IMG/VR virus record: IMGVR_UViG_3300046660_000488
Coordinates: 124,001-188,000 of that record
Length of the DNA: 64,000 nt
Direction: 5' to 3' (one strand)
Position numbers and translations under genes: made by a program. Shown one piece after another: positions 1-62,003 of the stretch (position 1 is the first letter of the stretch; each line of letters begins with the position of its first letter). Below the pieces are notes generated by a model. It made no database searches, had not been told where the DNA came from, and worked only from the letters and a program-made list of their open reading frames with translations.

Positions 1-507
1 TATGCGTTCCGTGACGAATTGCTGGCGCGCACCGGCGCCCGCAGCCAGCGCATCCAGCAAGGCTACGTCGGTGAGCACATTCGCTTCCGGCTGTCCCAGA
101 CGGCGTCGTATCTGCGGACGTTCAACGCCTTCATGACCTTCAAGATGAAGGTCGGGGACGAACTGATCGAGATCGAGACCGACATGGCGCTCGCTGATTT
201 CCGCAAGCTCTGGGAGTCCGACAAGGTCGAGCGCAAGCTTATCAAGGAACGCATCTGCGTTCCGCACTACAACAACACGTGGGAAGTCGATTTCTTCATC
301 GAACCGGCCGACGTCGGCAATGGATTCGAGAAAATCTACATGGTCATGGCAGAGGTCGAACTGCCGCCCGGCAGGCTCCTGCCGTCAAGCGTGCCGAAAT
401 TCATCAACGACAACCTGATCTATTTGGTTGAGCCCAACGACCTGCGGTTCGTCAACGCCCGCCTCGGCACGCCGGACGAGGTCCGCGCACTGGTCGCCAG
501 CCTCTAG
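1..507 (+). CDS. CYTH-domain (triphosphate tunnel) protein, 5'-truncated by the window edge
   Basis: Frame open from base 1. CYTH-like pattern: RFRL..T.K, IEIE, KER, WEVDFF, AEVEL, RF.N..L. Confidence 0.7.
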   Translation, partial: YAFRDELLARTGARSQRIQQGYVGEHIRFRLSQTASYLRTFNAFMTFKMKVGDELIEIETDMALADFRKLWESDKVERKLIKERICVPHYNNTWEVDFFIEPADVGNGFEKIYMVMAEVELPPGRLLPSSVPKFINDNLIYLVEPNDLRFVNARLGTPDEVRALVASL

Positions 508-1802
508 CGTTTCTTGATCGGCGCGAAGCGCATGCGGCTGGTGGGGATCACCACGCTGGCGTTGAACTCGCCGATGAAATTGGCGGGCATGTCGCTGGCC
601 TGCCACGGGTCGCGGTCCCAGCCTTGGGATCGCGGCGATCCCTTCATTTCGTAATTGCCGACGTTGTCGCGGCGAATGTCGCCGTTGTAATACTCGCTGT
701 CGTGGTTGTCGTTCTCAGTTTCCAACTCGGCGGCGCGCGCATTGGCTTCGTCAGCCGTGTTGAACGTTTCCTTGTGCGTGACGTCGTCGGCGTACTCTTC
801 GCCGTTCCACTTCGCTCGATAGTAAGTCACCGTGTATTTCATCGGTGTGCGGAAGTAGATCACGCACGGAAACTTGTCTCCACCGGCCTTCAGCACGCGG
901 GCCGCGCGGTGGCGACCTTCGTGGCCCTTGACCTTCCCGGTCTCTTGAACCACCCGCAGGAACGGGATGTTGTAAGAGGACTTGTTGAAGTCTGGGTCCG
1001 TCCCCTTCTTGAAATCGTCGAGCGACACCTTGGCGTCGTCCAGCACGTCCTGATACTCGCGCTCGTTCGTCGTCGTCAGACGGATGAAGTCGGCCGGGTT
1101 CATGACGCAGATCATCGCGCCATACATGCTGCGCGCATGCTTCACGCCGCCCTTGTTCAGCGGTAGGCGGACGGTCTCTTCGTTCACCGCGTTGGCGGCC
1201 CGCTCCAGATCGTCCCGCGTGCCGCGCGCCATGACCTCGACCCGGTCGGCCGGGATCGCGTCCGTGATGGCCACCACGCCCATGCCCAAGGTGTGCTTGG
1301 CGCGCCAGCCGTCCTGATCGGTGTAGGCGATCTTGACCAGCACGTTGTTCGCGCCCGGCTCGGCGTAGTTCAGGTCAGGCTCTGCTGAGGCGTGGACGAT
1401 AGGACGGCCGCGAAAGACGCCGCTGGACGATCCGTTCGTGTACTCGGCGTCGGACATCACGCGATAGAGGTGCTTGGGCGGCTCGCCGTCCTGTGTGCGC
1501 GGCAGGACGCGGCCATCCTTGAAGGGACCTTCGATCAGGCCCTCGACCACCGGAGCCTTCTTGTTGGCGGGTTTGCCGTCATCGCCGTAGAAGGTCTGCT
1601 TGCCGGTCTTGTCCTTGTTCGGGGTGTCCTTGGCGCCGGTGGTGTGACCAAAGCCTGTCCACGTCGGCGGCAGGCCGTTGTCATCGACGGTGTTGCCGAA
1701 TTTGGAAGCCTGACGCTTCGTCTCGCCCGGCCCCACGTCGCAGGTGGAGTTGATGCCGGGGACCACGAGGCCAAGTTCAGAAAGGATTTCACGAGCGCGC
1801 AT
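504..1802 (-). CDS. Late multidomain protein (putative internal head protein): MRAREILSE leader, ART-like middle domain, ParB/Srx-like domain
   Basis: TAAATA 5 nt upstream of the ATG. HLYRVMS..HAS..IPADRVEV is ART-fold-like; GHEGRHRA..FPCVIY is ParB-like. Confidence 0.55.
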   Translation of the reverse strand: MRAREILSELGLVVPGINSTCDVGPGETKRQASKFGNTVDDNGLPPTWTGFGHTTGAKDTPNKDKTGKQTFYGDDGKPANKKAPVVEGLIEGPFKDGRVLPRTQDGEPPKHLYRVMSDAEYTNGSSSGVFRGRPIVHASAEPDLNYAEPGANNVLVKIAYTDQDGWRAKHTLGMGVVAITDAIPADRVEVMARGTRDDLERAANAVNEETVRLPLNKGGVKHARSMYGAMICVMNPADFIRLTTTNEREYQDVLDDAKVSLDDFKKGTDPDFNKSSYNIPFLRVVQETGKVKGHEGRHRAARVLKAGGDKFPCVIYFRTPMKYTVTYYRAKWNGEEYADDVTHKETFNTADEANARAAELETENDNHDSEYYNGDIRRDNVGNYEMKGSPRSQGWDRDPWQASDMPANFIGEFNASVVIPTSRMRFAPIKKR

Positions 1803-1807
1803 TGCTG

Positions 1808-1813
1808 TATTTA
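1808..1813 (-). promoter_or_regulatory. T4-type late promoter TAAATA, 5 nt before ATG
   Basis: Minus strand reads gaTAAATAcagcaATG. Confidence 0.75.
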
Positions 1814-1842
1814 TCGACCACAGTTTTCACAGATGCTACTGT
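1814..1842 (+). promoter_or_regulatory. Sigma70-type promoter giving a leaderless transcript
   Basis: TCGACC-N17-TACTGT-N6-ATG(1849). Confidence 0.5.
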
Positions 1843-3442: not shown

Positions 3443-3448
3443 TATTTA
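3443..3448 (-). promoter_or_regulatory. T4-type late promoter TAAATA
   Basis: Minus strand reads ccTAAATAtgcctATG. Confidence 0.7.
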
Positions 3449-3621
3449 GGCAATTTCGTTTCCCAGTCCGAAAAACGAGCTTGCCACCCGGCCGGTGTTT
3501 CCCTATCCATGTCCACGACGCGCCCTTGCTCAGTCTCGGTTTCACCGATTTCACGAGACGACCCGGCCAGACAGGGTTGGGCCTATCTGGTTGATAGCAA
3601 GCGGCGCGTCTCCCTACCGAA

Positions 3622-11285: not shown

Positions 11286-11752
11286 GCAAGATCAAGAAAA
11301 CCTTCAGCATCTACTCGCAGGCGTTCTACGCCAAGCCCGAGATCGAATATCTCGAAGGGCGCGAGGAAATCGTGGGCGGCGTTCACTGGAAGCTTCCGGG
11401 GCGGACCCTGTACCGTCGCGACTACGGCGACGTGAAGGGTCTGTTCCACGACGAGATCACCATCCACTACGACGATCACGGCGCGGGCCTCCATCTGGAG
11501 ATCGACGTGGTGTGGTTCGTCGATAAGGGCGAGAACGTGCCCACCCTTCTCAACCGGGAAGTCGTCCTCCAGCTTCCGGACAGCGACGCCAAGAGCCTTC
11601 TGCGTTCCCTGAACGTGATGGACAATTATTCGCCGCGCCAGCTTGCGGCCGAGTTGGTCACACTCGGTTTCTCGGACAAGACCCTCCGCAGGCTGGAAGA
11701 TCGTTACGAGGTCGAGGACGAGGACGAGGACGAAGATGCTGGTGAAAACTAA
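11282..11752 (+). CDS. Hypothetical protein with acidic C-terminus
   Basis: Coupled ORF ending EDEDEDEDAGEN. Confidence 0.6.
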   Translation: MSKIKKTFSIYSQAFYAKPEIEYLEGREEIVGGVHWKLPGRTLYRRDYGDVKGLFHDEITIHYDDHGAGLHLEIDVVWFVDKGENVPTLLNREVVLQLPDSDAKSLLRSLNVMDNYSPRQLAAELVTLGFSDKTLRRLEDRYEVEDEDEDEDAGEN

Positions 11753-12002
11753 GCGCCGCTACGTCGCCGCCAGCTACCCATGGTGGCTGTCCTCGTTCGT
11801 CCATTCGCTGCTGGTCGGCGGCCCCATCGGCTACGGGTTCCTCACTTTCCTGTGGTGGCTGGCGGGCTATGAGATCAACGTCCCGCTGGCCATCGTCATG
11901 CTCACGTCCGCGTTCCTTGGCGTCGTGATGACGGTCGCTCGCGCGCTCTACCGCAGGCGCCTGCAAGCGCTGCATCCCAACGATTTTCTAAGGTTCGTCT
12001 GA
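11736..12002 (+). CDS. Small membrane protein
   Basis: Two hydrophobic helices. Confidence 0.55.
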   Translation: MLVKTKRRYVAASYPWWLSSFVHSLLVGGPIGYGFLTFLWWLAGYEINVPLAIVMLTSAFLGVVMTVARALYRRRLQALHPNDFLRFV

Positions 12003-12361
12003 TGGGCTACAAGATCAAGTATTTCGGCTGGAACAACGAGGCCGGGCACGACAAGGTGTGGGGCTACGTCCTGTTCGACGGCGTGAAACTCTACAATTTC
12101 TGGGGGCCGCGCGGCAAGAAACTGGCGTTCCAAGAACACGAGTACGATGCGTCCCGGCCGTTCAGCGGCATGGCGCGGCAGTTGGAGACTCGTGCGGCGG
12201 CCAAGACCCGCAAGGGCTATCGCCAGATCGACTCCAAGGACATCGAGACGGAAATCCCCGGCTTCAAACTGGAATTCGAGAAGCAACTGACCATCGCCAA
12301 GATGTTCGAGCGCTTCCGATACCAAGAAGGCGACAACGGCGACGACTTCTGGAACAGTTAA
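12002..12361 (+). CDS. WGR-domain-like protein
   Basis: DKVWGY..NFWGPRG....K..KGY pattern. Confidence 0.6.
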   Translation: MGYKIKYFGWNNEAGHDKVWGYVLFDGVKLYNFWGPRGKKLAFQEHEYDASRPFSGMARQLETRAAAKTRKGYRQIDSKDIETEIPGFKLEFEKQLTIAKMFERFRYQEGDNGDDFWNS

Positions 12362-12400
12362 TTTGAAGCATTGCGGATGTTTAGCCAGCACGACGCTGGC

Positions 12401-12406
12401 TAAATA
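12401..12406 (+). promoter_or_regulatory. T4-type late promoter TAAATA, 5 nt before ATG
   Basis: TAAATAttgcaATG. Confidence 0.75.
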
Positions 12407-12411
12407 TTGCA

Positions 12412-13710
12412 ATGCGCGCAGAACAACTCTTCGAAGACATTTTCCTGACCGACCGGATGTCGGCGTTCGAGGCTATCCGCCAGCATCCGAACCTGTTCGT
12501 GCACTTTTCGTCGGGCATCACCCGCGATGGTCAGCGCTCCCCTAGCGCTCCGAAATTCGGCATCAATCCGAGCAAGACCCATGGCGACCCGCCGGGCATC
12601 TATTTCTACTACAATCGCTGGCTCCTGAAATCGGACGACGTGTCTGACGGCCAGTACGGCGTCCACGGCTCCGAATATTTCTGGGTGTGCAACATCACCA
12701 AGACGTCCAACTCGCTCAACATCGGAGCGATGAAGAAAGAGGACGCCATTCGCCTTGCCAAGCGCAACGGCTGGGAAGACGAATACTACGACTGCATCCG
12801 CAAGGGCAACGTTCTCACGTCATCGCAGACCGCGAAGGCTGCGAAGACCGTTGGAGGCCAGTTCTGGGGCATTATGGACTATCTGGTCAACGAGGCGAAG
12901 ACGCACTCGTGGCTGAAGCTCTTGCGCGGCGTTGACGCGATTTTCGATTCCGGCCTCGGCATCATCAACTACCAAGAACCGGCTCAAGTCATCGTCCTGA
13001 ACAAGGCGCTGATCAAGATCGTCACCTTCGGTACGAACCGCGACAAGCAGGGCAACGTCGTCGCTCGCACCGTCAAAGCGTTCTCGGACAAGATCGGCGG
13101 AAGGTTCAGCTTCAAGTACAAGAGAGCGATCATCGACTTCGAGATCGATGGCGCCCCGGTGCAATGGAGCTTTGACGATTACGGCCGCAAGTCCACGTCG
13201 CAGTTCAAGGAGGGTTTCTGGGTCACTGACACTGAACCTCGCAGCATGGCGTCACAAGACGCCAATTGGTTCGGCGAAGGCCTGATGAAGTCGTACGAGG
13301 CCCTGAAAAGATACGGCAAGCTTGAGAAGACTGGGACGGTCTCCGAGTGGAGTCCACAGTCGGCCGTCGAATTCTCTAAGCAGTTGTTCACCAAGGCGCT
13401 TCTCTACAACCGCACCAACGTCAAAGACGGCGTTCTGATCATCACCGGCGACAACACCGGCGTGCTGTCTTCGTACAACCGGATCGAAGTAAATCACGAC
13501 GGTTCCGTGATGTTCCTGATCGATTTTTACAAGCGTGGTGGCGTTGAGGTTTGCAAGGCAGAAGCCACGTTCCCGGCCAAGACTCCGCGCAGCCATATCG
13601 TCGCCGAGCTTCGCAAGCAGTTGATTTCCTCGGCGAACCAAGCGGTCGAAAAGAAAGAAGTGGTCAGCCTCGAAAAGCTGGCCGCCGTCACAGGGCTCAT
13701 TTTGTCCTGA
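12412..13710 (+). CDS. Late protein, putative internal head protein with an N-terminal ART-like domain
   Basis: MRAEQLFE leader; FVHFS..KFGINP..DPPGIYFY. Confidence 0.5.
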   Translation: MRAEQLFEDIFLTDRMSAFEAIRQHPNLFVHFSSGITRDGQRSPSAPKFGINPSKTHGDPPGIYFYYNRWLLKSDDVSDGQYGVHGSEYFWVCNITKTSNSLNIGAMKKEDAIRLAKRNGWEDEYYDCIRKGNVLTSSQTAKAAKTVGGQFWGIMDYLVNEAKTHSWLKLLRGVDAIFDSGLGIINYQEPAQVIVLNKALIKIVTFGTNRDKQGNVVARTVKAFSDKIGGRFSFKYKRAIIDFEIDGAPVQWSFDDYGRKSTSQFKEGFWVTDTEPRSMASQDANWFGEGLMKSYEALKRYGKLEKTGTVSEWSPQSAVEFSKQLFTKALLYNRTNVKDGVLIITGDNTGVLSSYNRIEVNHDGSVMFLIDFYKRGGVEVCKAEATFPAKTPRSHIVAELRKQLISSANQAVEKKEVVSLEKLAAVTGLILS

Positions 13711-13712
13711 AC

Positions 13713-13769
13713 TAAATATGGCTTTAAGCCATGAGCAATGGCTATAGTTAACTCATACTTTAGAGCCAT
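13713..13769 (+). promoter_or_regulatory. Late promoter followed by a leader with alternative hairpins
   Basis: TAAATA at 13713-13718; ATGGCT at 13718 and 13738; AGCCAT at 13727 and 13764. Confidence 0.6.
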
Positions 13770-13773
13770 TTTC

Positions 13774-14298
13774 ATGCGAGCCATTGAGATTTTCGAGCGT
13801 AGTAGCGCCACCAAAGGCGACTTCAAGACGCTGTATTGCAGCCGCAAGCTGCTGAACGGCAAAGAGATCGTCGAGTGGGCGAAGAGCCAAGGGCTCCCCA
13901 AGTGCTTGGACCCGGATAACATGCACGTCACCGTTGCTTACTCCAAGGAGAAAATCGACTGGTCTGAAATGACCGACAGTTTCGACAACGTCCGCAGCGA
14001 CGGCGGCAAACGCGAAATGGCGCTGTTCGGCCAGAACAAGGACGCGGTGGTCCTGAAATTCGAGTGCCCCGATCTGGACAGCCGCTGGCAGGAATTCAAG
14101 GACGATTTCGGCGCCTCGTGGGATTTCGACGGCTACAATCCCCACGTGACGATCTCCTATGACGGCCTGCCCAAGGGCATCGACATTGACGACATCGAGC
14201 CGTTCGAAGGCGTGCTGGAATTCGGTCCCGAGAAAATGGACATCGTCGATCTGAAGTGGCGCGGCAAGGTCAAGGAAACCAAGCTCGACACCGAATAA
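13774..14298 (+). CDS. acb1: 2H phosphodiesterase, T4 gp57B/Acb1-like anti-CBASS nuclease homolog
   Basis: Two HxT motifs (MHVTVAYS, PHVTISY). GASWDFDGYNPHVTISY resembles the recalled T4 57B segment GATHDFDDYTPHITLSY. Confidence 0.75.
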   Translation: MRAIEIFERSSATKGDFKTLYCSRKLLNGKEIVEWAKSQGLPKCLDPDNMHVTVAYSKEKIDWSEMTDSFDNVRSDGGKREMALFGQNKDAVVLKFECPDLDSRWQEFKDDFGASWDFDGYNPHVTISYDGLPKGIDIDDIEPFEGVLEFGPEKMDIVDLKWRGKVKETKLDTE

Positions 14299-16069: not shown

Positions 16070-18019
16070 ATGTCATTGTCACTATTCGATACTTTCAAGG
16101 AAAAGTACGCCAAGTCGAAGGTCGAGGTCATGCCGTTGGGCGACTACCTCGAACTCTGCAAGACTGAGCCGATGGCGTATGCCACCGCGCCCGAGCGTAT
16201 GATCGCCGCAATTGGCGAACCCCAACTGGTGGACACCGCGAGCGATCCGCGCCTGTCCCGCGTGTTCCTGAACCGCACCGTCAAGGTCTACCCGGCCTTC
16301 AAGGATTTCTACGGCACGGAAGCTGTCGTGGAACGGATCGTCTCGTACTTCCGGCAAGCGGCCCAAGGGCTGGAAGAGCGCAAGCAGGTTCTGTACCTTC
16401 TCGGCCCGGTCGGCGGCGGCAAGTCGTCCATCGCCGAGCGTCTGAAGCAACTGATGGAAGCCAACCCCATCTACGTGCTGGCTGTCGATGGTCCGGACGG
16501 CAAGCCGGAACTCAGCCCGGTGTTCGAGACCCCACTGGGCCTCTTCCCGGCCGAGCACTACGCCTCGACGATGGCCGAGCAATACGGCATCAACAAGCGC
16601 TACCTGAACACCATCATGAGCCCGTGGGCGTCCAAGCGCTTGCGTGAATTCGAAGGCGACATCACCCAGTTCAAGGTGGCCAAGGTCTGGCCGTCGCGTC
16701 TGGAACAAATCGCCATCTGCAAGACCGAACCCGGCGACGAGAACAACCAAGACATTTCCTGCCTCGTGGGCAAGACCGACATCCGCAAGCTGGAGTTCTT
16801 CAGCCAGAACGATCCGGACGCCTACGCCTTCTCCGGCGCTCTGAACCGGGGCAACCAAGGCATCATGGAATTCGTCGAAATGTTCAAGGCGCCGATCAAG
16901 GTGCTGCACCCGCTGCTGACGGCCACGCAAGAAGGCAACTACGTCGGCACGGAAGCGATCTCGGCGATCCCGTTCAACGGCACGATCCTCGCGCACTCCA
17001 ACGAGAGTGAGTGGCAGTCGTTCCGCAACAACAAGAACAACGAAGCCTTCCTCGACCGCATCTGCGTGATCAAGGTCCCCTACTGCCTGCGCGACACCGA
17101 AGAGAGCAACATCTACCAGAAGATGCTCAACGGCTCGACGCTGTCGGAAGCCCCGCTGGCTCCGGAAACCCTCTCGCTGCTGTCGCGCTTCAGCGTGCTC
17201 AGCCGCCTGAAGGACCACCCCAACTCGACCCTGTGGTCGAAGATGCGGGTCTATGACGGCGCCAACATGAAGGAGACCGATCCGCGCTCCAAGTCGGTGC
17301 AGGAATACCGCGACGACGCTGGCGTGGACGAAGGCATGAACGGTATCTCGACTCGCTTCGCGTTCAAGATTCTGTCGAACGCCTTCAACTACGACACCGA
17401 AGAAATCGGCGCCGACCCGGTCCTGCTGATGATGGTGCTGGAGGAAGCGATCCGCCGTGAACAATTCCCGGCCGAGATCGAGAAGAAATACCTCGGGTTC
17501 CTGAAGGACGATCTGGTTCGCTCCTACGCCGAATTCGTCGGTAGTGAAATCCAGACGGCCTACCTCGAAGCCTACGACGAGTACGGTCAGAACCTGTTCG
17601 ACCGCTACATCGAGTACGCCGACCACTGGCTGCAAGAGATCGACTACAAGGACCCCGACACCGGCAACCTGTTCAACCGTGCGGTCCTGAACAACGAACT
17701 CGAAAAGATCGAGAAGGCGGCGGGAATCGGCAACCCGAAGGACTTCCGCCACGAGACGGTCAATTTCGTCCTGCGTCAGCGGGCTCGTGGCAACTCGGTG
17801 ACGTGGACCAGCTACGAGAAACTGAAGCGGGTCATCGAGAAGAAGATGTTCTCGTCGGTCGAAGAGCTTCTTCCGGTCATCAGCTTCGGCTCGAAGCAGG
17901 ACAAGGACACGGAACGCAAGCACAAGGACTTCGTCGAGCGGATGGAGAAGAAGGGCTACACGGCCCGCCAGACCCGCCGCATCGTCGAGTGGTACATGCG
18001 GACCCGCAAGTCGGGCTAA
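16070..18019 (+). CDS. prkA: PrkA/YeaG family AAA+ ATPase / serine kinase
   Basis: Walker A GPVGGGKS; EPGDENNQDIS; EFVEMFKAPIKVLHPLLTATQEG; full length. Confidence 0.97.
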   Translation: MSLSLFDTFKEKYAKSKVEVMPLGDYLELCKTEPMAYATAPERMIAAIGEPQLVDTASDPRLSRVFLNRTVKVYPAFKDFYGTEAVVERIVSYFRQAAQGLEERKQVLYLLGPVGGGKSSIAERLKQLMEANPIYVLAVDGPDGKPELSPVFETPLGLFPAEHYASTMAEQYGINKRYLNTIMSPWASKRLREFEGDITQFKVAKVWPSRLEQIAICKTEPGDENNQDISCLVGKTDIRKLEFFSQNDPDAYAFSGALNRGNQGIMEFVEMFKAPIKVLHPLLTATQEGNYVGTEAISAIPFNGTILAHSNESEWQSFRNNKNNEAFLDRICVIKVPYCLRDTEESNIYQKMLNGSTLSEAPLAPETLSLLSRFSVLSRLKDHPNSTLWSKMRVYDGANMKETDPRSKSVQEYRDDAGVDEGMNGISTRFAFKILSNAFNYDTEEIGADPVLLMMVLEEAIRREQFPAEIEKKYLGFLKDDLVRSYAEFVGSEIQTAYLEAYDEYGQNLFDRYIEYADHWLQEIDYKDPDTGNLFNRAVLNNELEKIEKAAGIGNPKDFRHETVNFVLRQRARGNSVTWTSYEKLKRVIEKKMFSSVEELLPVISFGSKQDKDTERKHKDFVERMEKKGYTARQTRRIVEWYMRTRKSG

Positions 18020-18097
18020 GCACTGACGGAGAGGCGTCTATTTTGGCGCCTCTCCACCACCGCCACGATTGCTTTAGTACCATTTCTGAGTAGGCAT

Positions 18098-19432
18098 ATG
18101 ACTGGCTGCATCATTATCGACCGTCGCAAGAACCCCAAGGACAAGAGTCTGTCCAACCGCCAGCGGTTTTTCGAGCGGGCCAAGAAGGCTGTGCGCGAAG
18201 CCGCCAAGCGGACTCTGGCTGGCCGTTCGCTGTCGGACACGGGTGATGCGATCATCAATATCCCGACCGAAGGCTTGGGCGAGCCCCATTTCCATCACGA
18301 CAACAACGTCGGCGAATACGACATCGTCCTGCCCGGCAATCGGCAGTTCATCGTCGGCGACAAGATCAAGAAGCAACAGGACGGCGAAGGCGGCGGCCGT
18401 GGTAGCGGCGGCAATGGCGAAGGCGGTGAGGACGATTTCCAATTCGCCCTGACGCACGAAGAATTCCTCGACGTCATTTTCGACGATCTCGAACTGCCGG
18501 ACCTGATCAAGAAGACCGAACGCAACGCCGTGGCGTTCGCGCCCAAGCGCGCGGGTCACACCAACGTCGGCATGCCCTCCAACCTGAACGTCGAGAAGAC
18601 GGCTATCGCAGGCATCGCCCGACGCTTGGCTCTGCGGGCGCCCAAGAAGCGCCAAATCCGCGAGCTTGAGGACGAATATCGCGAAGTTCTGGCCAAGTTC
18701 CACGACGCTCAGGACTCCGGCCTCATCTACGCCCTGACCACGCGACTGAACGAGATCATCACCGAAGTCGTGGCGCTGGAACGCAAGATGGCGGCGGTCG
18801 GCTTCCTCGACGACGTGGACCTTCGCTACAACAACTTCGTCCAGCAGCCCAAGCCGATCACTCAGGCCGTGATGTTCTGCATCATGGACGTGTCGTTCTC
18901 GATGGGCGAGCGCGAGAAGATCATCGCCAAGAAATTCTTCATCCTGATGAACCTCTTCCTGAAGCGTCGGTACGAGAACATCGACGTGGTCTTCGTTCGC
19001 CACCACAGCGAAGCCATCGAATGCGACGAGGAAACGTTCTTCACGAGCCGTGAAGGCGGCGGAACGGTCGTGTCGTCCGGCTATCGCAAGATGATCGACA
19101 TCATGAAGGATCGCTACGCCTCGGATGACTGGAACATCTACATGGCCCAAGCATCGGATGGCGACAACTACGATGGCGACAACGGCGAGGTCACCCGCTA
19201 CCTGAGCGAGGAAATCCTGCCGGTGATCCAACACTTCACCTACATCGAAATCGTCGATGAGTGGCGTAAGCAATTCTTCGGCGACCCGTCCGGCGGCTAC
19301 AGGTCCAACCTGTGGCAAACCATCGACGCGATTGCCAGCCAGTTCGAAAACGTCTCGGCCGCCATGCTCGAAGACGAAAGCGAAGTGATCCGCGTGTTCC
19401 GCAACCTCTTCAAGTCAGAGAAATCCCAGTGA
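18098..19432 (+). CDS. yeaH: YeaH/YhbH family vWA-domain protein
   Basis: IIDRR.N...KS..NRQRF, VLPGN, MIDAS-like MDVSFSM, GGT, ASDGDN. Confidence 0.95.
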   Translation: MTGCIIIDRRKNPKDKSLSNRQRFFERAKKAVREAAKRTLAGRSLSDTGDAIINIPTEGLGEPHFHHDNNVGEYDIVLPGNRQFIVGDKIKKQQDGEGGGRGSGGNGEGGEDDFQFALTHEEFLDVIFDDLELPDLIKKTERNAVAFAPKRAGHTNVGMPSNLNVEKTAIAGIARRLALRAPKKRQIRELEDEYREVLAKFHDAQDSGLIYALTTRLNEIITEVVALERKMAAVGFLDDVDLRYNNFVQQPKPITQAVMFCIMDVSFSMGEREKIIAKKFFILMNLFLKRRYENIDVVFVRHHSEAIECDEETFFTSREGGGTVVSSGYRKMIDIMKDRYASDDWNIYMAQASDGDNYDGDNGEVTRYLSEEILPVIQHFTYIEIVDEWRKQFFGDPSGGYRSNLWQTIDAIASQFENVSAAMLEDESEVIRVFRNLFKSEKSQ

Positions 19433-20898
19433 CCACGCTTCCCCTCTGGACAGATTCTGAATGGTCGTTCGAGCGCATCCGTCGCGTCTATGACGAGTGC
19501 GAAAAGATCGGCATCGGTGAGCTTGGTCTGGACATCTACCAGAACCAGTTCGAGATCATTTCGTCCGAGCAGATGATCGACCGCTACACCAGCGTCGGCA
19601 TGCCGCTCTACTATAACCATTGGTCGTTCGGTAAGCAGTTCTCGCGCGAGTGGGACAGCTACAAGGCTGGCAAGTCGGGTCTCGCGTACGAGTTGGTCAT
19701 CAACAGCAACCCCTGCATCAATTACTTGATGGAGGACAACACGATGACGACCCAAGCTCTCGTCATCGCGCACGCTGCTTTCGGCCACAACCATTTCTTC
19801 AAGAACAACTACATGTTCAAGACGTGGACTGACGCCGACGCCATCGTCGATTACCTCGTGTTTGCCCGCGATTACGTGGCCGAGTGCGAAGATCGTCACG
19901 GCCGCCAAGCGGTAGAAACTTTCCTCGACAGTTGCCATGCTCTGCAAGAGTACGGCGTGAACCGCTACGTGCGGCCGTCCAAGCTGTCCCTGAAGGATGA
20001 GCGCAAGAAAGCCGCCGAGCGCGAGGCGTACCTGCAAACGCGGGTGGACGAACTGTACCGGATCATCCCCGACAAAACGGCCACCAAGGAGAAGGAAAAG
20101 TTCCCGAAGCAGCCGGAAGAGAACCTTCTGTATTTCTTCGAGAAGAATTCACCGAAGCTGGAGCCGTGGCAACGTGAGTTGATCCGCATCGTTCGCAAGA
20201 CTTCGCAGTATTTCTACCCGCAAGGTCAGACGAAAATCGCCAACGAAGGCTTCGCGACGTGGACACACTACACGATCATGAACCGTCTGCACGACAAGGG
20301 CCTGACGACTGACGGCGCGCACCTCGAATTCCTGAAGCTGCATGCTGGCGTCATCTTCCAGCCGGACTATGACGACAAGTATTTCTCTCTGCCGCTGAAC
20401 CCCTACAAGCTGGGTTTCGAAATCCTGCGGGACATCGAACGCATCTGCAAGGAGCCCACGGACGAGGATCGCCACTGGTTCCCCGACATCGTCGGCGAAG
20501 ACCCGGTCGAGGTGATCAAGGACGCCGTCGCCAATTACCGCGACGAAAGCCTGATCCGCCAGTTCCTGTCACCCAAGGTGATCCGCGATTTCCGGTTCTT
20601 CCAACTGAAGGACAACCGGGAATCTGACCACTATCTGGTCGAGACGATCCAGAACGAAAAGGGCGTGCTGGATATTCGCGACAAGCTGGCCCAGCAATCC
20701 GAACGCGACACGCGCCTGCCGAACATCGAGATCGAGGAATGCGATCTGGAGAACCGACGCCTGTACCTTCGCTACTCGCCCAACGGCACGAAGGAATTGA
20801 GCGACGCCACCGAAATGATGCGGCACGTCCGCCGCCTGTGGGGCTACAGCGTCTACCTCCGCGACACCAAGGGCAAGCTTCTGGGACTGGTTCAATGA
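19429..20898 (+). CDS. ycgB: SpoVR/YcgB family protein
   Basis: GMPLYYNHWSFGK, AYELVINSNPC, HAAFGHNHFFKNN, NEGFATWTH; GTG start overlapping the yeaH stop. Confidence 0.95.
   Translation: MTTLPLWTDSEWSFERIRRVYDECEKIGIGELGLDIYQNQFEIISSEQMIDRYTSVGMPLYYNHWSFGKQFSREWDSYKAGKSGLAYELVINSNPCINYLMEDNTMTTQALVIAHAAFGHNHFFKNNYMFKTWTDADAIVDYLVFARDYVAECEDRHGRQAVETFLDSCHALQEYGVNRYVRPSKLSLKDERKKAAEREAYLQTRVDELYRIIPDKTATKEKEKFPKQPEENLLYFFEKNSPKLEPWQRELIRIVRKTSQYFYPQGQTKIANEGFATWTHYTIMNRLHDKGLTTDGAHLEFLKLHAGVIFQPDYDDKYFSLPLNPYKLGFEILRDIERICKEPTDEDRHWFPDIVGEDPVEVIKDAVANYRDESLIRQFLSPKVIRDFRFFQLKDNRESDHYLVETIQNEKGVLDIRDKLAQQSERDTRLPNIEIEECDLENRRLYLRYSPNGTKELSDATEMMRHVRRLWGYSVYLRDTKGKLLGLVQ

Positions 20899-22603: not shown

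Positions 22604-22607
<4 letters not shown>
22179..22607 (+). CDS. Hypothetical coiled-coil protein
   Basis: Ala/Lys-rich helical sequence; coupled. Confidence 0.6.
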
Positions 22608-23955
<1,348 letters not shown>

Positions 23956-23971
<16 letters not shown>

Positions 23972-29397: not shown

Positions 29398-29412
29398 GAC
29401 AGTATTTAGACC

Positions 29413-30198: not shown

Positions 30199-30206
30199 TA
30201 TTTATA
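30199..30206 (-). promoter_or_regulatory. Perfect T4 late consensus TATAAATA
   Basis: Minus strand reads TATAAATActgccATG. Confidence 0.8.
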
Positions 30207-33474: not shown

Positions 33475-34686
33475 TTACTGGAATTCCGTGCCGCCCTTGC
33501 GGCCACCATAGTCTGGGCTCACCCACTTCACGATCTTGCGGCCGTGGCGGATGTGGCGGTTGTTACCGCCGTCGAGCCCGGTGATCACCACGCCCTCGCG
33601 GATGTGCTTGCCGCTGAAGCTGTCCTTGCCGTCGCGCACGGCGCGCAGGGCGTCCGCGTCGAACGGACCCTCGTAGAGCTTGGGAACGACGTCCATGCCC
33701 CATTGCTCGGCCAGCATGGCGACCGTCTCATAGGGAAGCCAGAGGCCGTTGGTCGTCTCACCGACGAACACGTCGAACAGGGCGATGCCGACGTCCTTCT
33801 TGTTGCGGCCGTACTTCAGGTCTTGGGCGCCGTAAATCTCGGCGAAGGCGCGCACCGGCAGGCCCGCGCAGATCGCCATGCTGAAGGCGGCGATGTTCGG
33901 CTCGAATTGCTTCAGGATGCTGTTCAGGGCGCGGGTGTAGACGTTGTCGTTCGGCTCGCCGTCGTCTTTCGTCTTCTTGAAACTCATGCCCTTCCCGGCC
34001 ATCAACTTCGACGAAATGTAGACGCTCTTGGTCACGCCGAAACAGTGCTCGTGGTTCAGGCCGGGCACGTAGCCGATCTGGACGTTGAAGCCGTGAATTT
34101 TCTCCGTGCCGATGACGGGCTCACCCGGCTCGAACATGTCGGTCTGGTCTTGGATACTGTCGAAATCGTAGCGCAGCGAAACGCCGAACGAGTTGAAGAC
34201 CGACCCTTGGTTCTCGGGTGGTATCTCCGGCTCGTACTTGGTGATGCCGAGCTTGGCGGCGACGTCCGTGCCCACGGTCACGTAGTAGCTGTGGCCTTCG
34301 CCTTCCAGCGGGAATTCGTACTCGGGGTTCCCCTCCAACTCCCAGAGCAACGTGGGGTCGGCGTCTTCCGGAATCGGGACCGGGATCAGCGGCAGGACGA
34401 TGCCTTGAGAGTAGATGCCGCGCAGCCGGAGGGGATGGACGCGATTGCCTTGCGGCCCGGCCAGCCTGCCCATGTTGGTTTCACGGTTCCAGAAATTGTG
34501 GCGGACCAGAATCCAGTCCGGAACGATGGCGCCTTCGGGGACGTAGATGATCGCGTCGCCGGGCTTGTACTGGTTGCGGCCGACCACGCATTCATAGCCG
34601 CCGACCTTGGCGACCGACAGGACGTCGCCGGTGGGGTGATCGTAGACTTCGTCGATCTTGCGGACTTTGACAGCGAAGGTGGACAT
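33475..34686 (-). CDS. RNA ligase, DRB0094/Rnl5-like, with an N-terminal OB-like domain
   Basis: Motif I TEKIHG, EIYG, FDV, EGVV, KWVS.DY. Confidence 0.88.
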   Translation of the reverse strand: MSTFAVKVRKIDEVYDHPTGDVLSVAKVGGYECVVGRNQYKPGDAIIYVPEGAIVPDWILVRHNFWNRETNMGRLAGPQGNRVHPLRLRGIYSQGIVLPLIPVPIPEDADPTLLWELEGNPEYEFPLEGEGHSYYVTVGTDVAAKLGITKYEPEIPPENQGSVFNSFGVSLRYDFDSIQDQTDMFEPGEPVIGTEKIHGFNVQIGYVPGLNHEHCFGVTKSVYISSKLMAGKGMSFKKTKDDGEPNDNVYTRALNSILKQFEPNIAAFSMAICAGLPVRAFAEIYGAQDLKYGRNKKDVGIALFDVFVGETTNGLWLPYETVAMLAEQWGMDVVPKLYEGPFDADALRAVRDGKDSFSGKHIREGVVITGLDGGNNRHIRHGRKIVKWVSPDYGGRKGGTEFQ

Positions 34687-38569: not shown

Positions 38570-38636
38570 GGACTTATTTATTGCCGGTAATTAACCACGT
38601 ATTGTACAAGTAGAGTCATAGGAGACATTCATTTCT

Positions 38637-39962: not shown

Positions 39963-41822
39963 ATGACCAAGCTCTCGTCGAAATATCGCTCTGTCACCTG
40001 CGGAGCCCTGACCAGCGCAAATGTGTCCGAGACACACACGCTGTCGGGCTGGGTGCACAACGTGCGAGATCACGGCGGTCTGGCCTTCATCGACCTGCGC
40101 GACAATTACGGTATCACGCAACTGGTGCTGAACCCGACCGAATTCCCCGAGATCGCCCACATCCGCAAGGAAAGCGTCATCCGGGTTATCGGTGAGGTCG
40201 TTCCGCGTCTGGCTGGCACGACGAACGCCAAGCTCTCCACCGGCGGGATCGAACTGAAGGTCGCGCACGCCATGGTGCTGTCGGAAGCCGTTGAGCTTCC
40301 CGTGCCCGTTTTCGGCGAGCCTGACTACCCCGAAGAGCTTCGCCTGAAGCATCGCTATCTCGACCTTCGCCGCGAAGGGCTGCACAAGCGCATCCAGCTT
40401 CGCTCGGACGTGGTCAACTTCCTGCGCGAGCGGATGCTGGGCGAAGGCTTCAAGGAATTCCACACGCCCATCCTGACGGCGTCGTCGCCGGAAGGTGCGC
40501 GCGATTTCCTCGTGCCCGCCCGCCTGCACCCCGGAAAATTCTACGCCCTGCCGCAAGCCCCTCAGCAATTCAAGCAATTGCTGATGGTCGCCGGGTTCGA
40601 CCGATATTTCCAGATCGCGCCGTGTTTCCGCGACGAAGCTGGCCGGGCCGACCGGTCGCCGGGCGAATTCTACCAACTCGACATCGAAATGAGCTTCGTC
40701 GATCAGGAAGACATCTTCCGGATGATCGAGCCGATCCTGTTCGACACGTTCGCCAAATTCCGACCGCAGCGAGACGTCTCGCCCGACAGCGGCTTCCTGC
40801 CCGGCACGGTTGCGGACAAGCTCAACATTTCGTCCTACCCGTTCAAGCGCATCCCCTATCGGGAGAGCATCCAGAAATACGGCACGGACAAGCCCGACCT
40901 GCGGAACCCGCTGGAAATGCAGGACGTGTCGAACGTGTTCAAGGGCGGCGGCTTCGGCATCTTCGCCTCAATCCTCGACGCCGATCCCGACAACCGCATC
41001 TGGGCGCTCCCCGCCTATGGCGGCGGCGCCAACTCGTTCACGCGAGGCATGGACTCGTGGGCCAAGGAACAGGGCCTGCCGGGCATGGCCTACATCGCGT
41101 GGAAACCCGAAAGCACCGACAACGATCTCGAAATCTCCTTCACCACCGCCACCGGCCCCGTCGCCAAGGCGCTAGGTAACGACGGCGCGGACAGGCTGCG
41201 CGACCGGTTCATGATGGCCGGAGGCGACGCCCTGTTTTTCTTCGCTGGCAAGCCGGACGATTTCTACAAGATCGCGGGCGCGGCGCGCACGAAGCTGGGC
41301 GAAGACCTCGGGCTGATCGACAAGAACCGGTTCGAATTCTGCTGGATCGTGGACTTCCCCATGTACGAGTTGAACGACGAGGGGAAGATCGACTTCAGCC
41401 ACAACCCGTTCTCGATGCCGCAAGGCGAAATGGATGCGCTGATCGGCCAAGACCCGCTCGACATCCTCGCCTACCAATACGACATCGTCGTCAACGGCAT
41501 CGAACTGTGCTCGGGCGGCATCCGGAACCACAAGCCGGAGATCATGCTGAAGGCCTTCGAGATCGCGGGCTACGGCCCGGAAGTCGTCGAAGAGAAATTC
41601 GGCGGGATGTTCAACGCCTTCAAGTACGGCGCTCCGCCGCACGGTGGCCTCGCACCCGGCATCGACCGCATGGTCATGCTGCTGGCTGGCGTGGACACCA
41701 TCCGCGACGTCATCGCTTTCCCGCTCAACCAGCAGGGCCAAGACCTGATGATGGGCGCGCCGTCCGAGATCACCGACAAGCAATGGAAAGAGTCCGGTAT
41801 CCGCCCGGCGCTGAAGGTCTGA
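39963..41822 (+). CDS. aspS: Aspartyl-tRNA synthetase, probably non-discriminating Asp/Asn type
   Basis: [34 protein letters not shown], motif 2 FRDE, motif 3 [14 protein letters not shown]. Confidence 0.97.
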
Positions 41823-43383: not shown

Positions 43384-43820
43384 CCAAACCTCTGACGTAC
43401 CCACAACAGCACATCTTGGACTTGATATTGGACGGTGGTCCATACCGGCTCTTTGAGATCGAGAGCGAACTGAGGCTCAACCCCGGTTTTCGAACCGTTG
43501 TCCGCAACCTGATCGCCAAAGGGCGGCTCAGGTACAATGGCGATCAACTCGAAGCCATCGTCTGGCACGAGCGCCCCGACGAGTATTTGAACTGGGTTCA
43601 CATCAATGGCTGTCAGATGACAGCAACGTTTGACGGTGAATTCTACCGCATCTTCAATTTCAAGTACGACACGCCAGAGAATGGCAAACGCGCTCTGCGT
43701 GACCTGTCTCGTATCTGGGGCGTGACCGTATTCACGCACCATTACCCAGATGACGACAAGGAATTCTGGGATAGCATGCTGGCCAAATACTACGTCTACA
43801 TGCCCATCCCACCTAAATAA
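43380..43820 (+). CDS. Hypothetical protein
   Basis: ATGA overlap. Confidence 0.5.
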   Translation: MTKPLTYPQQHILDLILDGGPYRLFEIESELRLNPGFRTVVRNLIAKGRLRYNGDQLEAIVWHERPDEYLNWVHINGCQMTATFDGEFYRIFNFKYDTPENGKRALRDLSRIWGVTVFTHHYPDDDKEFWDSMLAKYYVYMPIPPK

Positions 43821-50353: not shown

Positions 50354-50668
50354 TTAGAACAGGATCACCGGGACCGTGGCGATCCCCAGTTCCTTGGCCG
50401 CGTTCGCGCGGTGGCGACCATCTTCCTTGCCATTGGCGTAGATGATCAGCGGATCGAGCGTCCGCCCGCTCTGGATGTGGTTCTTCAGGTCGTCGATATT
50501 GTCGCGCGAGACGTCGTCGATTTCGAGCGGCCGAACCTTGCTGAGGTATTCGTCCGGGGTCATGGACACCATCCTCCCACCGTTCTGCTGATAGTTGGCC
50601 TCGCCGTACCACTCATCGCGAGGGGCCAGCGGATAGGAACGGGCTTCGGTCAATTCGTGAAAGCGCAT
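50354..50668 (-). CDS. Late ParB/Srx-like small protein, putative internal head protein
   Basis: TAAATA (50678-73)-N4-ATG; MRFHELTE leader; DPLII...EDGRHRA..A..LG...VPV. Confidence 0.7.
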   Translation of the reverse strand: MRFHELTEARSYPLAPRDEWYGEANYQQNGGRMVSMTPDEYLSKVRPLEIDDVSRDNIDDLKNHIQSGRTLDPLIIYANGKEDGRHRANAAKELGIATVPVILF

Positions 50669-50712
50669 GCGGTATTTATTGACGCCGATTGACTGGTAAA
50701 CTAAATTAACGT

Positions 50713-52456: not shown

Positions 52457-52481
52457 ACCATACTCAAACCATTTGAAGTCC

Positions 52482-53354
52482 ATGACCGTATTCAACAAAG
52501 TTGCGACCGAAATATTCGGTGAGCTTCCTCCGCAAAAGATGCGTCAGGTTGCTTCAGAAATCGAGCAATACTATTTCAGCAAGTACAAAGGTCCAACTGA
52601 GGTCCCCACTCGTTTTAGGGATTTCTTGCCGTATTGCAAAATCCACGCGCAGCCGTCGTACAAGCTGGCCTCCATCAGGCCTCACCAGTATCAGAACGAC
52701 TTGGCGAATAATCTGTCAGGCGTGGCCAATGGTCACCACCATGTGCTGATCAATAGCTCGCGGCAGATGGGCACGACGACGATGCTCATGCTGTTCCAAC
52801 TGTGGTCCGCGCTTCGCACGCCGCTGTCGGACATCCATTTCGCGACGTGGAACCTGAACAGCGCCCACGAAGGCCTCGACCGCATTCGTACGGTTCTGCC
52901 GCACTTGCCGCTCACGTTCGGTGAGGTCGCCTCGATGACGAAATCGGAACTCAAGTTCACCAACGGCTCGCGAATTTCCGGCGCCGCGATAGGCTCGAAC
53001 CACATTGCCGGAAAGCGGTTCTCCACCATCGTCATCGACAACGCCTCGATGGTGGGAATTCACGCTTCTCGGAAGCAAACCCTCGACGACATTTTGCACC
53101 AAGCGGCCGTCTACAACACGCGGGTCGTCATCGCGTCTCAGCCCGGCTATGTCGGCGAGTTCTTCCACAAACTGTGGGCCGATCCGGAAACCGACATCGG
53201 CGGCAAGAGCCGGTTGCAATTTGCCAAGGTCGTCCTGAACTGGCGATCCAACCCGCTGCAAAATACGGGCTGGGCCGCAAGCCATCGGGCGAACCTGCCG
53301 ACGAGCCAGTACCGTCAGGAATTCGAGAACGAGTTCATCTACAAAACAGCTTGA
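52482..53354 (+). CDS. Degenerate large-terminase (gp17) ATPase-domain paralog
   Basis: YQ motif, SRQMGTTT, F.NGS.I, IVIDN, ASQP, YRQEFENEF; no nuclease domain. Confidence 0.75.
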   Translation: MTVFNKVATEIFGELPPQKMRQVASEIEQYYFSKYKGPTEVPTRFRDFLPYCKIHAQPSYKLASIRPHQYQNDLANNLSGVANGHHHVLINSSRQMGTTTMLMLFQLWSALRTPLSDIHFATWNLNSAHEGLDRIRTVLPHLPLTFGEVASMTKSELKFTNGSRISGAAIGSNHIAGKRFSTIVIDNASMVGIHASRKQTLDDILHQAAVYNTRVVIASQPGYVGEFFHKLWADPETDIGGKSRLQFAKVVLNWRSNPLQNTGWAASHRANLPTSQYRQEFENEFIYKTA

Positions 53355-60560: not shown

Positions 60561-60568
60561 GCCTCTAT

Positions 60569-61976: not shown

Positions 61977-62003
61977 ATATTGGAAACAACGAGGTTTCCA
62001 ATG
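61974..62003 (+). promoter_or_regulatory. Late promoter with a hairpin covering the SD and ATG
   Basis: TAAATA at 61974-79; TTGGAAAC/GTTTCCAA(tg). Confidence 0.75.

What the first reader, a model, noticed from the sequence alone, without database searches (positions are those of the whole stretch)
13774..14298. Acb1-like cyclic-nucleotide nuclease apparently built for packaging into the virion
Seen: a 2H phosphodiesterase with both HxT motifs and gp57B-like flanks, plus an extra MRAIEIFE leader and a late promoter. Known: T4 Acb1 (57B) degrades CBASS cyclic di- and trinucleotides. Inference: this copy is loaded into the head, cut after IFE and injected, giving pre-emptive anti-CBASS or anti-type III activity from the start of infection.
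Basis: partly seen in the sequence, partly recalled or inferred. Interest (0 to 1): 0.85.

Follow-up and report, generated by a model that had tools for sequence, protein, structure and literature searches.

The report
Leader-tagged Acb1 nuclease in a megaphage
A 578-kb soil phage encodes a genuine Acb1-type enzyme of the kind that destroys bacterial cyclic-nucleotide alarm signals, and its conserved eight-residue tag, its late-type promoter and many relatives fused to portal or prohead-protease proteins suggest, without proving, that it travels inside the phage head.

Summary
ORF 13774-14298(+) is a strong Acb1-family 2H phosphodiesterase (Pfam E=7e-37), with both HxT motifs and a confident Acb1-like model. 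An eight-residue leader, MRAIEIFE, lies outside the domain. A T4-late-like motif, CTAAATA, lies upstream and is one of 19 copies against 1.5 expected.

The packaging idea is not shown, but it has more support than a single sequence could give:
- The leader is conserved in the closest homologues from other megaphages.
- Unrelated late-promoter genes of the same genome carry it too.
- It is the only low-confidence part of two structure models.
- It ends in I-x-E, the T4 gp21 cleavage type, and resembles the T4 Alt and IP targeting peptides.
- At least 44 of the 71 closest Acb1 domains in IMG/VR are fused to portal or prohead-protease proteins; others sit in large multi-effector proteins.

Weak points:
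- I could not retrieve this phage's own prohead protease. Its cultured relative Atu_ph07 has a gp21-type one.
- There are no virion or RNA data.
- T4 Acb1 does not cut cA4, so the anti-type-III claim holds at most for cA3.
- Iyer et al. predicted injected 2H domains in 2017.

Verdict: a new variant of a known kind. I put head loading at about 0.45.

The parts
13712..13718 (+). T4-late-promoter-like motif CTAAATA upstream of the Acb1 gene
   Evidence: One of 19 [AC]TAAATA copies against 1.48 expected. The same motif precedes structural, neck, terminase and lysis genes. Function as a promoter is inferred.
13718..13786 (+). 5' leader region with five copies of ATGGCT/AGCCAT forming alternative hairpins, one of which spans the start codon
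   Evidence: the repeat finder. RNA fold -25.4 kcal/mol, z=-2.4. Role unknown.
13774..14298 (+). Acb1-family 2H phosphodiesterase gene (174 aa plus stop)
   Evidence: Pfam Acb1 E=7e-37. AF2 pLDDT 87, with Foldseek top hits Acb1 7t26/7t27.
13774..13797 (+). Leader MRAIEIFE, a candidate capsid-targeting and cleavage peptide ending in I-F-E
   Evidence: Conserved as M[KR]xx[ED][LI]FE in homologues. Codons vary synonymously. pLDDT below 50. Shared with other late genes.
13798..13824 (+). Linker RSSATKGDF between the leader and the first strand of the domain
   Evidence: Outside the Pfam profile. Low to intermediate pLDDT. Variable in the alignment.
13825..14262 (+). Acb1 catalytic domain (residues 18-163)
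   Evidence: Pfam envelope. Invariant or nearly invariant Y21, H51, T53, H124, T126 and W162.
13924..13932 (+). First HxT motif (H51-V52-T53)
   Evidence: Read from the sequence. Aligns to H44/T46 of T4 Acb1.
14143..14151 (+). Second HxT motif (H124-V125-T126)
   Evidence: Read from the sequence. Aligns to H113/T115 of T4 Acb1.
12400..13710 (+). Adjacent upstream gene (432 aa, 12412-13710) with CTAAATA 5 nt before its ATG and the leader MRAEQLFE. It belongs to a large uncharacterised family whose members often start with the same leader.
   Evidence: AF2 pLDDT 91.6 with residues 1-10 below 50. The gene pair is syntenic in L002 and L003.
504..1814 (-). Unrelated 432-aa gene (504-1802) with ATAAATA 5 nt before its ATG and the leader MRAREILSE
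   Evidence: No similarity to the 12412 gene.
50354..50679 (-). 104-aa gene with ATAAATA 4 nt before its ATG and the leader-like start MRFHELTE
   Evidence: It misses the strict pattern and is borderline.

Best explanation
The ORF encodes an active Acb1-type 2H phosphodiesterase that cleaves cyclic di- and trinucleotide defence signals of the CBASS type. It is made late in infection. Its first eight residues act as a T4-style capsid-targeting propeptide that brings the enzyme into the prohead core together with other leader-bearing effectors, such as the neighbouring 432-aa protein. The gp21-type (S77) prohead protease then cuts after I-F-E, and the mature enzyme is ejected with the DNA into the next host. 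Shown: family membership, catalytic residues, fold, conservation and portability of the leader, enrichment of the promoter motif, and fusion of sister domains to head proteins. Inferred: late transcription, targeting, cleavage, ejection and substrate range.
For: Enzyme: Pfam Acb1 E=7e-37. The AF2 model has pLDDT 87 and its best Foldseek hits are Acb1 7t26/7t27 and the phage BCSR5 phosphodiesterase. H51/T53/H124/T126, Y21, F118 and the lid residue W162 are conserved.

Leader: conserved as M[KR]xx[ED][LI]FE in 9 of the closest homologues and in megaphage loci L002-L004. Its codons differ synonymously, so selection acts on the peptide. It lies outside the Pfam profile and is the only segment with pLDDT below 50, both in this protein and in the neighbour. 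A pattern derived from outside homologues matches only 3 of 741 open ATG frames in the window. All three are real genes with the late motif: 3 of 16 against 0 of 71, Fisher p=0.005. Other unrelated proteins in related megaphages carry MRxxEILxE after the same motif. The leader ends in (I/L)-x-E, the T4 gp21 site type, and resembles T4 Alt (MELITE|LFDE, cut at ITE-6) and the IP targeting peptides (PMC9026906).

Head association of the clade: the best PDB sequence hit is the C-terminus of the Pam3 portal protein, E=2.5e-20, against 4.6e-9 for free Acb1. Of 71 full-length nearest IMG/VR ORFs, 34 carry portal domains, 10 carry prohead-protease-type domains (S78, XkdF, DUF2213) and 2 carry Mu F. 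Others carry ART, NUDIX or GNAT domains. Only 10 of 75 are stand-alone. P0005 is leader-Acb1-ART-PolyVal.

Lineage: the nearest cultured relatives are Phosso and Atu_ph07. Atu_ph07 gp204 is an S77 protease. The S77 proteases collected via Atu_ph07-like and PA5oct-like queries start MxxxL-x-E. [quoted passage not shown]
Against: There is no direct evidence: no virion proteome and no RNA run. The S77 protease of this genome is not in the window, and five searches failed to retrieve it. The promoter motif lies 55 nt from the ATG, unlike the 4-6 nt of other late genes, and hairpins lie between, so regulation may differ. Stand-alone Acb1 proteins of T4 and of a KVP40-like phage also have short N-terminal extensions, yet T4 Acb1 is known only as an intracellular enzyme (PMC9117128). 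The Rak2-like phage EJP2 has Acb1 without a leader. The Acb1 homologue of phage G was not seen in its proteomic data (PMC12484599). The gene sits among auxiliary genes, not in a head module.
Confidence: 0.45

Rival explanations
1. It is an ordinary intracellular Acb1, made in the infected cell like T4 Acb1. The N-terminal octapeptide is a family-typical extension, for stability, folding or regulation, with no role in head loading.
For: T4 57B and ValKK3 Acb1 also carry 9-12 residues before the first strand. T4 Acb1 is characterised only as an enzyme acting in infected cells (PMC9117128). The gene lies among auxiliary genes. Ten of 75 close relatives are stand-alone.
Against: It does not explain why the same octapeptide heads unrelated proteins under the same late motif. 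It does not explain why both models leave the leader unstructured. It does not explain why most sister domains are welded to portal or prohead-protease proteins.
Confidence: 0.35
2. It is a 2',3'-cyclic phosphodiesterase for RNA end-healing that works with the phage RNA ligase against tRNA or mRNA nucleases, and is not an anti-CBASS enzyme.
For: PHROG 755 is labelled 'RNA ligase'. An Rnl-type RNA ligase lies at 33475-34686(-). PMC7824862 read the 2H enzymes of jumbo phages this way.
Against: The Acb1 profile scores 127 bits against 21 for LigT. The nearest structures are Acb1 and a phage phosphodiesterase with a lid. The Acb1 stacking and lid residues are kept. The gene is 19 kb from the ligase and not in an operon with it. 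PMC5512222 noted that such phage 2H domains are not linked to ligases.
Confidence: 0.1
3. The shared N-terminal peptide reflects constraints at the nucleotide level on the 5' ends of near-leaderless late mRNAs, such as promoter-downstream or ribosome-loading sequence. It is not a protein signal.
For: Most late genes have the motif 4-6 nt before the ATG, so their mRNAs would be almost leaderless.
Against: Most late genes with that spacing do not have the peptide. The Acb1 gene itself has a 55-nt leader. The peptide is kept across phages while its codons change synonymously.
Confidence: 0.05

Closest known systems
Acb1 (T4 gp57B; Erwinia phage FBB1 Acb1, PDB 7T26/7T27)
   Same: Same Pfam family, 2H fold and HxT/HxT tetrad. 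It keeps the Tyr of strand 1, Phe118 and the lid Trp.
   Different: Identity is only about 22% in the structural alignment. It has an extra leader and linker of about 17 residues and an 11-residue C-terminal tail. Asp stands at the position of the adenine-reading Glu141, and there is no Trp at the W74 column. By sequence it is closer to portal-fused domains than to free Acb1.
T4 internal proteins IPI-III and Alt with their capsid-targeting sequences, processed by gp21
   Same: A short N-terminal peptide with hydrophobic residues at positions 4 and 7, ending in (I/L)-x-E. It is shared by unrelated non-essential proteins scattered outside the head module and expressed late. Alt starts MELITE|LFDE (PMC9026906).
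   Different: Targeting and cleavage are proven for T4 and only inferred here. The cargo here is a signal-degrading nuclease, which is not among the known T4 head cargos.
2H/Acb1 domains fused to portal, MuF or prohead-protease proteins and to polyvalent proteins (Iyer et al. 2017, PMC5512222; Pam3 portal gp3, PDB 8HDS)
   Same: Closest relatives by sequence, with the catalytic residues kept. The predicted logic is the same: deliver a nucleotide-signal-degrading enzyme with the DNA.
   Different: Those are covalent fusions to head proteins. This one is a free 174-aa protein that would need a targeting peptide instead.
Burkholderia phage BCSR5 phosphodiesterase (PDB 9Q2Y/9Q2G)
   Same: Foldseek rank 3-5, TM about 0.6-0.68. 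A 2H phosphodiesterase with a lid that opens and closes.
   Different: About 21% identity. I did not look up its function or substrate.

Membership tests
Acb1 (PF23474) anti-CBASS 2H phosphodiesterase | Profile match above the curated threshold over the whole domain | tested here: met
   126.8 bits against a cut-off of 27; profile positions 1-142 of 144
Acb1 (PF23474) anti-CBASS 2H phosphodiesterase | HxT/HxT catalytic tetrad | tested here: met
   H51, T53, H124 and T126 align to T4 H44, T46, H113 and T115. The His residues are invariant in 27 sequences.
Acb1 (PF23474) anti-CBASS 2H phosphodiesterase | Compact 2H fold closest to solved Acb1 | tested here: met
   AF2 pLDDT 87.2. Foldseek top hits 7t26/7t27, E=2.5e-8, TM 0.56-0.71.
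Acb1 (PF23474) anti-CBASS 2H phosphodiesterase | Base-stacking aromatics (Y12, W74, F107, W147), the adenine-reading E141 and the C-terminal lid | tested here: inconclusive
   Y21, F118 and W162 are present. The W74 column holds Ala, with Phe85 two residues away. E141 aligns to Asp156. The alignment is approximate in the loops.
Acb1 (PF23474) anti-CBASS 2H phosphodiesterase | Hydrolysis of 3'3'-cGAMP, cA3 and related signals, but not cA4 | not testable with these tools
   Needs a biochemical assay. Specificity is known only for T4 Acb1 (PMC9117128).
T4-type capsid-targeted internal (ejected) proteins | N-terminal propeptide of 20 residues or fewer ending in (L/I)-x-E, with hydrophobic residues at about positions 4 and 7 | tested here: met
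   M-R-A-I4-E-I6-F7-E8. Compare IPIII MKTYQEFIAE and Alt MELITE (PMC9026906, PMC5694885).
T4-type capsid-targeted internal (ejected) proteins | The same propeptide on several unrelated proteins of one genome | tested here: met
   Genes at 12412, 1802(-) and 13774, with 50668(-) borderline. 3 of 741 open frames match, Fisher p=0.005. The same holds in L003, L004 and L011.
T4-type capsid-targeted internal (ejected) proteins | The propeptide is not part of the folded domain | tested here: met
   pLDDT below 50 for residues 1-12 (Acb1) and 1-10 (neighbour), against 87-92 overall
T4-type capsid-targeted internal (ejected) proteins | A gp21-type (S77) prohead protease in the same genome | tested here: inconclusive
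   Absent from the 64-kb window and not retrieved from the rest of the contig. Present in the relative Atu_ph07 as gp204.
T4-type capsid-targeted internal (ejected) proteins | Presence in virions in processed form and ejection into the host | not testable with these tools
   The phage is uncultured, from a rhizosphere metagenome, and no RNA or proteome data are held.
Portal-, MuF- or protease-fused and polyvalent virion-delivered 2H domains | Covalent fusion of the 2H domain to a head-assembly or polyvalent protein | tested here: not met
   This ORF is a free 174-aa protein with stops on both sides. Relatives are fused.

The most novel reading that the evidence does not exclude
A short, portable T4-Alt/IP-like N-terminal tag, M[KR]xxE[IL][FL](x)E, is the head-loading signal of a clade of soil megaphages. 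They would use it to pack a changeable set of anti-defence enzymes: Acb1, Acb1 fused to a further domain, and a large unknown family that may be ADP-ribosyltransferase-like. Signal-degrading nucleases would then be injected cargo. The same logic may hold for Acb1 of T4-like phages, whose N-termini resemble the IPI targeting peptide and whose gene sits next to ipI.
Probability: 0.35. Interest if true: 0.75.

Novelty: new variant of a known kind. Interest (0 to 1): 0.62.

Why it matters
Acb1 is known as an enzyme made after infection. If it is also delivered ready-made with the DNA, cyclic-nucleotide defences such as CBASS could be disarmed before any phage gene is expressed. That changes how the timing of the arms race is modelled. 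It would also explain why so many Acb1 domains are welded to portal and prohead-protease proteins. A defined eight-residue loading tag would in addition give a simple sequence handle for listing the ejected-protein repertoire of uncultured megaphages, and a testable tool for loading cargo into phage heads.

Tried and rejected
1. Start at ATG 13738 (186 aa). Rejected: the gene call and all homologues start at the Met of the leader.

2. Retrieving this phage's own prohead protease. It is not in the window. Walking 49 kb of the Phosso annotation found none either.

3. The neighbour 12412-13710 as an Alt-like ADP-ribosyltransferase. This was an ESM-Atlas lead only (score 0.88). Its family has invariant H31, Y66 and E189. 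However, it has no Pfam hit, no BLAST similarity to the ART domain of P0005, no informative Foldseek hit in PDB or BFVD and no match in cultured phages. I leave it as an unconfirmed lead.

4. The two 432-aa leader proteins as paralogues. Rejected, E=0.12.

5. Transcript evidence. Only DNA runs hold the locus.

6. Literature on Acb1 in virions or fused to portals. Nothing in Hobbs 2022, the 2025 2H-PDE survey, the Pam3 structure paper or recent reviews. Prior art is Iyer 2017.

7. A near-identical phage record. None found.

Full report
**What is there**

The window is positions 124001-188000 of a 578,292-bp IMG/VR contig, IMGVR_UViG_3300046660_000488, from a rhizosphere metagenome. It has 55-62% G+C. 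It belongs to a T4-core megaphage. The window carries:
- a gp15-like tail-sheath stabiliser, a neck adaptor, a virion structural protein, a terminase ATPase piece and an endolysin;
- a PrkA-DUF444-SpoVR operon;
- four aminoacyl-tRNA-synthetase genes.

The nearest cultured relatives, judged by the gp15-like protein, are Sinorhizobium phage Phosso (40%) and Agrobacterium phage Atu_ph07 (38%). No near-identical phage record exists.

**The enzyme**

ORF 13774-14298(+) encodes 174 aa. It matches Pfam Acb1 at E=7e-37 over the whole profile. LigT-type profiles match only weakly. The two HxT motifs are H51-V-T53 and H124-V-T126. They align to the catalytic H44/T46/H113/T115 of T4 Acb1. The strand-1 Tyr (Y21), F118 and the lid Trp (W162) are also kept. 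The adenine-reading Glu141 aligns to Asp156, and the W74 column is not conserved in this clade (residues from PMC9117128). An AlphaFold model built on 25 homologues has mean pLDDT 87. Its best Foldseek matches are Acb1 of phage FBB1 (7T26/7T27) and a lidded phosphodiesterase of Burkholderia phage BCSR5, well ahead of LigT. So the protein is a member of the Acb1 family and probably active. Its substrate range cannot be read from sequence.

**The leader**

The first eight residues (MRAIEIFE) and a nine-residue linker precede the Pfam domain. Five observations argue that this is a separate module.

- Conservation. The closest homologues start MRLKELFE, MKILDLFE, MKLIELFE, MKLNELFE, MRLSELFE and MRIQELFE. 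In three other megaphage contigs (415, 106 and 561 kb) they start MKIEDLFE, MKIIELFE and MRAFELFE. The codons differ synonymously, so the peptide is what is conserved. More distant members start MKTFNEFLNE and MKSFKQFLAE, close to the T4 IPII/IPIII targeting peptide MKTYQEFIAE.
- Not part of the fold. Residues 1-12 are the only part of the model with pLDDT below 50.
- Portability. The gene just upstream (12412-13710, 432 aa) starts MRAEQLFE. An unrelated 432-aa gene (504-1802, minus strand) starts MRAREILSE. A 104-aa gene (50354-50668, minus strand) starts MRFHELTE. A pattern written from homologues outside the window matches only 3 of 741 open ATG frames. All three are real genes carrying the late motif: 3 of 16 against 0 of 71, Fisher p=0.005. 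Related megaphages have further unrelated proteins that start MREFMEILTE, MRAYEILNE and MRRREILRE.
- The neighbour's family. It has 229 cluster representatives at E<1e-3 and is full of such starts, including MRAIELFE, almost the Acb1 leader. In its model too, residues 1-10 are the only low-confidence part.
- Cleavage-site type. The leader ends in (I/L)-x-E, the cleavage-site type of T4 gp21. It resembles T4 Alt, which starts MELITELFDE and is cut at ITE-6. In T4 the first ten residues of IPIII suffice to load foreign proteins into heads. Positions 4 and 7 matter for targeting, and positions 8 and 10 for cleavage (PMC9026906). Here these positions hold I4, F7 and E8.

**The promoter**

CTAAATA lies at 13712-13718. 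[AC]TAAATA occurs 19 times in the window against 1.5 expected. It stands before a virion structural gene (59466-60560), the neck adaptor (61980-62762), the terminase piece (52473-53354), the endolysin/gp15-like pair (44809 onward) and the leader-bearing genes. It is a one-base variant of the T4 late promoter TATAAATA, and a gene for a sigma-factor-like protein is reported in Atu_ph07. A late promoter is therefore a reasonable inference. For most genes the motif ends 4-6 nt before the ATG. For the Acb1 gene it ends 55 nt upstream, and the interval holds five copies of ATGGCT/AGCCAT that can form alternative hairpins, one spanning the start codon. I could not explain this. It may mean extra control of this gene.

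**Relatives are welded to head proteins**

This was the most informative result. The best solved-structure sequence match is not free Acb1 (E=4.6e-9). It is residues 465-619 of the portal protein of cyanophage Pam3 (8HDS, E=2.5e-20). In cultured phages the best tblastn hits lie inside annotated portal, head-morphogenesis or prohead-protease genes of Rhizobium, Pseudomonas, Synechococcus, Ruegeria and Edwardsiella phages.

Among the 75 untruncated nearest IMG/VR loci, only 10 ORFs are stand-alone. Of 71 ORFs scanned:
- 34 carry a portal domain;
- 10 carry a prohead-protease-type domain (S78, XkdF or DUF2213);
- 2 carry Mu F;
- several are proteins of 1,000-2,400 aa that also carry ADP-ribosyltransferase, NUDIX, GNAT or topoisomerase domains.

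The catalytic residues are kept throughout. P0005 is leader-Acb1-ART-PolyVal. In L002-L004 the leader-Acb1 unit carries a further conserved domain of about 195 aa with no Pfam match. That domain is absent here. So this clade of Acb1 domains is typically a capsid-interior passenger. The window's copy is the free form, which would need a tag to get in.

**Protease**

Atu_ph07 gp204 is a gp21-type S77 protease: 32% identity to T4 gp21, E=5e-18. [quoted passage not shown] Atu_ph07 virions hold 131 proteins, most of unknown function. The proteases collected with Atu_ph07-like and PA5oct-like queries start MxxxL-T/Y-E, like the LIE-9 of gp21. I failed to fetch the protease of this very contig. That is the main gap.

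**What the evidence does not support**

T4 Acb1 does not cleave cA4 (PMC9117128). Activity against type III CRISPR would therefore be limited to cA3-type signals, if it exists at all. T4 Acb1 is known only as an intracellular enzyme. Phage G's homologue was not seen in its proteome. A Rak2-like Acb1 has no leader. The neighbour's possible ADP-ribosyltransferase nature stayed an unconfirmed lead.

**Prior art and novelty**

Iyer et al. 2017 (PMC5512222) already described 2H domains fused to MuF or portal domains and in polyvalent proteins. They proposed that these domains are injected to degrade nucleotide signals. The T4 targeting-peptide system has been known since 1996. Neither Hobbs 2022, the 2025 survey of viral 2H phosphodiesterases, the Pam3 paper nor recent reviews mention virion-borne Acb1. 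The new element is a free Acb1 with a conserved, portable, Alt/IP-like tag in a megaphage clade. That makes it a new variant of known kinds, and it is testable.

**Verdict**

| Claim | Probability |
|---|---|
| Acb1-family enzyme | about 0.95 |
| Late expression | about 0.7 |
| Loaded into the head via the leader | about 0.45 |
| Cut after E8, given loading | about 0.7 |

Noticed in passing
window: 1808-1814(-), 3443-3449(-), 12400-12406, 29403-29409(-), 30199-30205(-), 38575-38581(-), 43813-43819, 50673-50679(-), 60566-60572(-), 61973-61979: In about ten genes the [AC]TAAATA motif ends only 0-6 nt before the start codon. If it is a -10-type late promoter, these mRNAs would be leaderless or nearly so, and none has a Shine-Dalgarno sequence.
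   Followed up: partly
window 13718-13786: There are five copies of the hexamer ATGGCT/AGCCAT in 69 nt between the late motif and codon 4 of the Acb1 gene. They allow mutually exclusive hairpins, one of which (13736-13743 with 13779-13786) encloses the start codon. This could be translational or attenuation control.
   Followed up: partly
window 12412-13710 (+): A 432-aa protein of a large, Pfam-less, metagenome-only family: 229 cluster representatives and no hit in cultured phages. H31, H57, D59, Y66, D179 and E189 are invariant, and the model is confident (pLDDT 91.6) but has no informative structural match. A language-model search hints at ART-PolyVal or AcrIF11-like ADP-ribosyltransferases. 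The gene pair with Acb1 is conserved in L002 and L003.
   Followed up: partly
L083 (T4 NC_000866) 11592-12411: In T4, gene 57B (Acb1) lies directly beside ipI. Its N-terminus MMEFKDFSTG resembles the IPI targeting peptide MKTFKEFTST: F4, K5 and F7 are identical, and positions 6, 8 and 9 are conservative. The Acb1 of a KVP40-like phage starts MKLSKFLE, and that of Alishewanella phage Slickus01 starts MNITELYE. I found no report on whether T4 Acb1 is in virions.
   Followed up: partly
PDB 8HDS chain A (Pam3 portal gp3), residues 465-619: The deposited portal sequence of cyanophage Pam3 ends in an Acb1-like domain (E=2.5e-20 to this ORF). My term search of the structure paper found no mention of it. 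The domain did not appear among Foldseek matches, so it may be unmodelled or removed in the virion.
   Followed up: partly
L002:6511-7488, L003:6496-7083, L004:6481-7074: In three related megaphages the leader-Acb1 unit continues into a conserved C-terminal domain of about 195 aa (55-64% identical among them) with no Pfam match. This domain is missing from the window's gene.
   Followed up: partly
window 52473-53354 (+): A gene of only 290 aa matches the ATPase part of large terminase subunits (PHROG 2, E=9e-11). The terminase may be split or interrupted in this phage.
   Followed up: no
window 16070-20898, 22604-23971, 39963-41822, 51016-52425, 57301-58761: The phage carries a complete PrkA-DUF444-SpoVR operon. 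It also carries CysRS, AspRS, a short Ile/Val/Met-type synthetase-like protein (469 aa) and GluRS.
   Followed up: no
L247:28586-29215, L249, L254, L263, L272, L087 (S77 proteases): The gp21-type proteases collected with Atu_ph07-like and PA5oct-like queries all begin MxxxL-(T/Y)-E. This mirrors the LIE-9 motif of T4 gp21 and the leaders found here, and is compatible with a shared targeting and self-cleavage peptide.
   Followed up: partly
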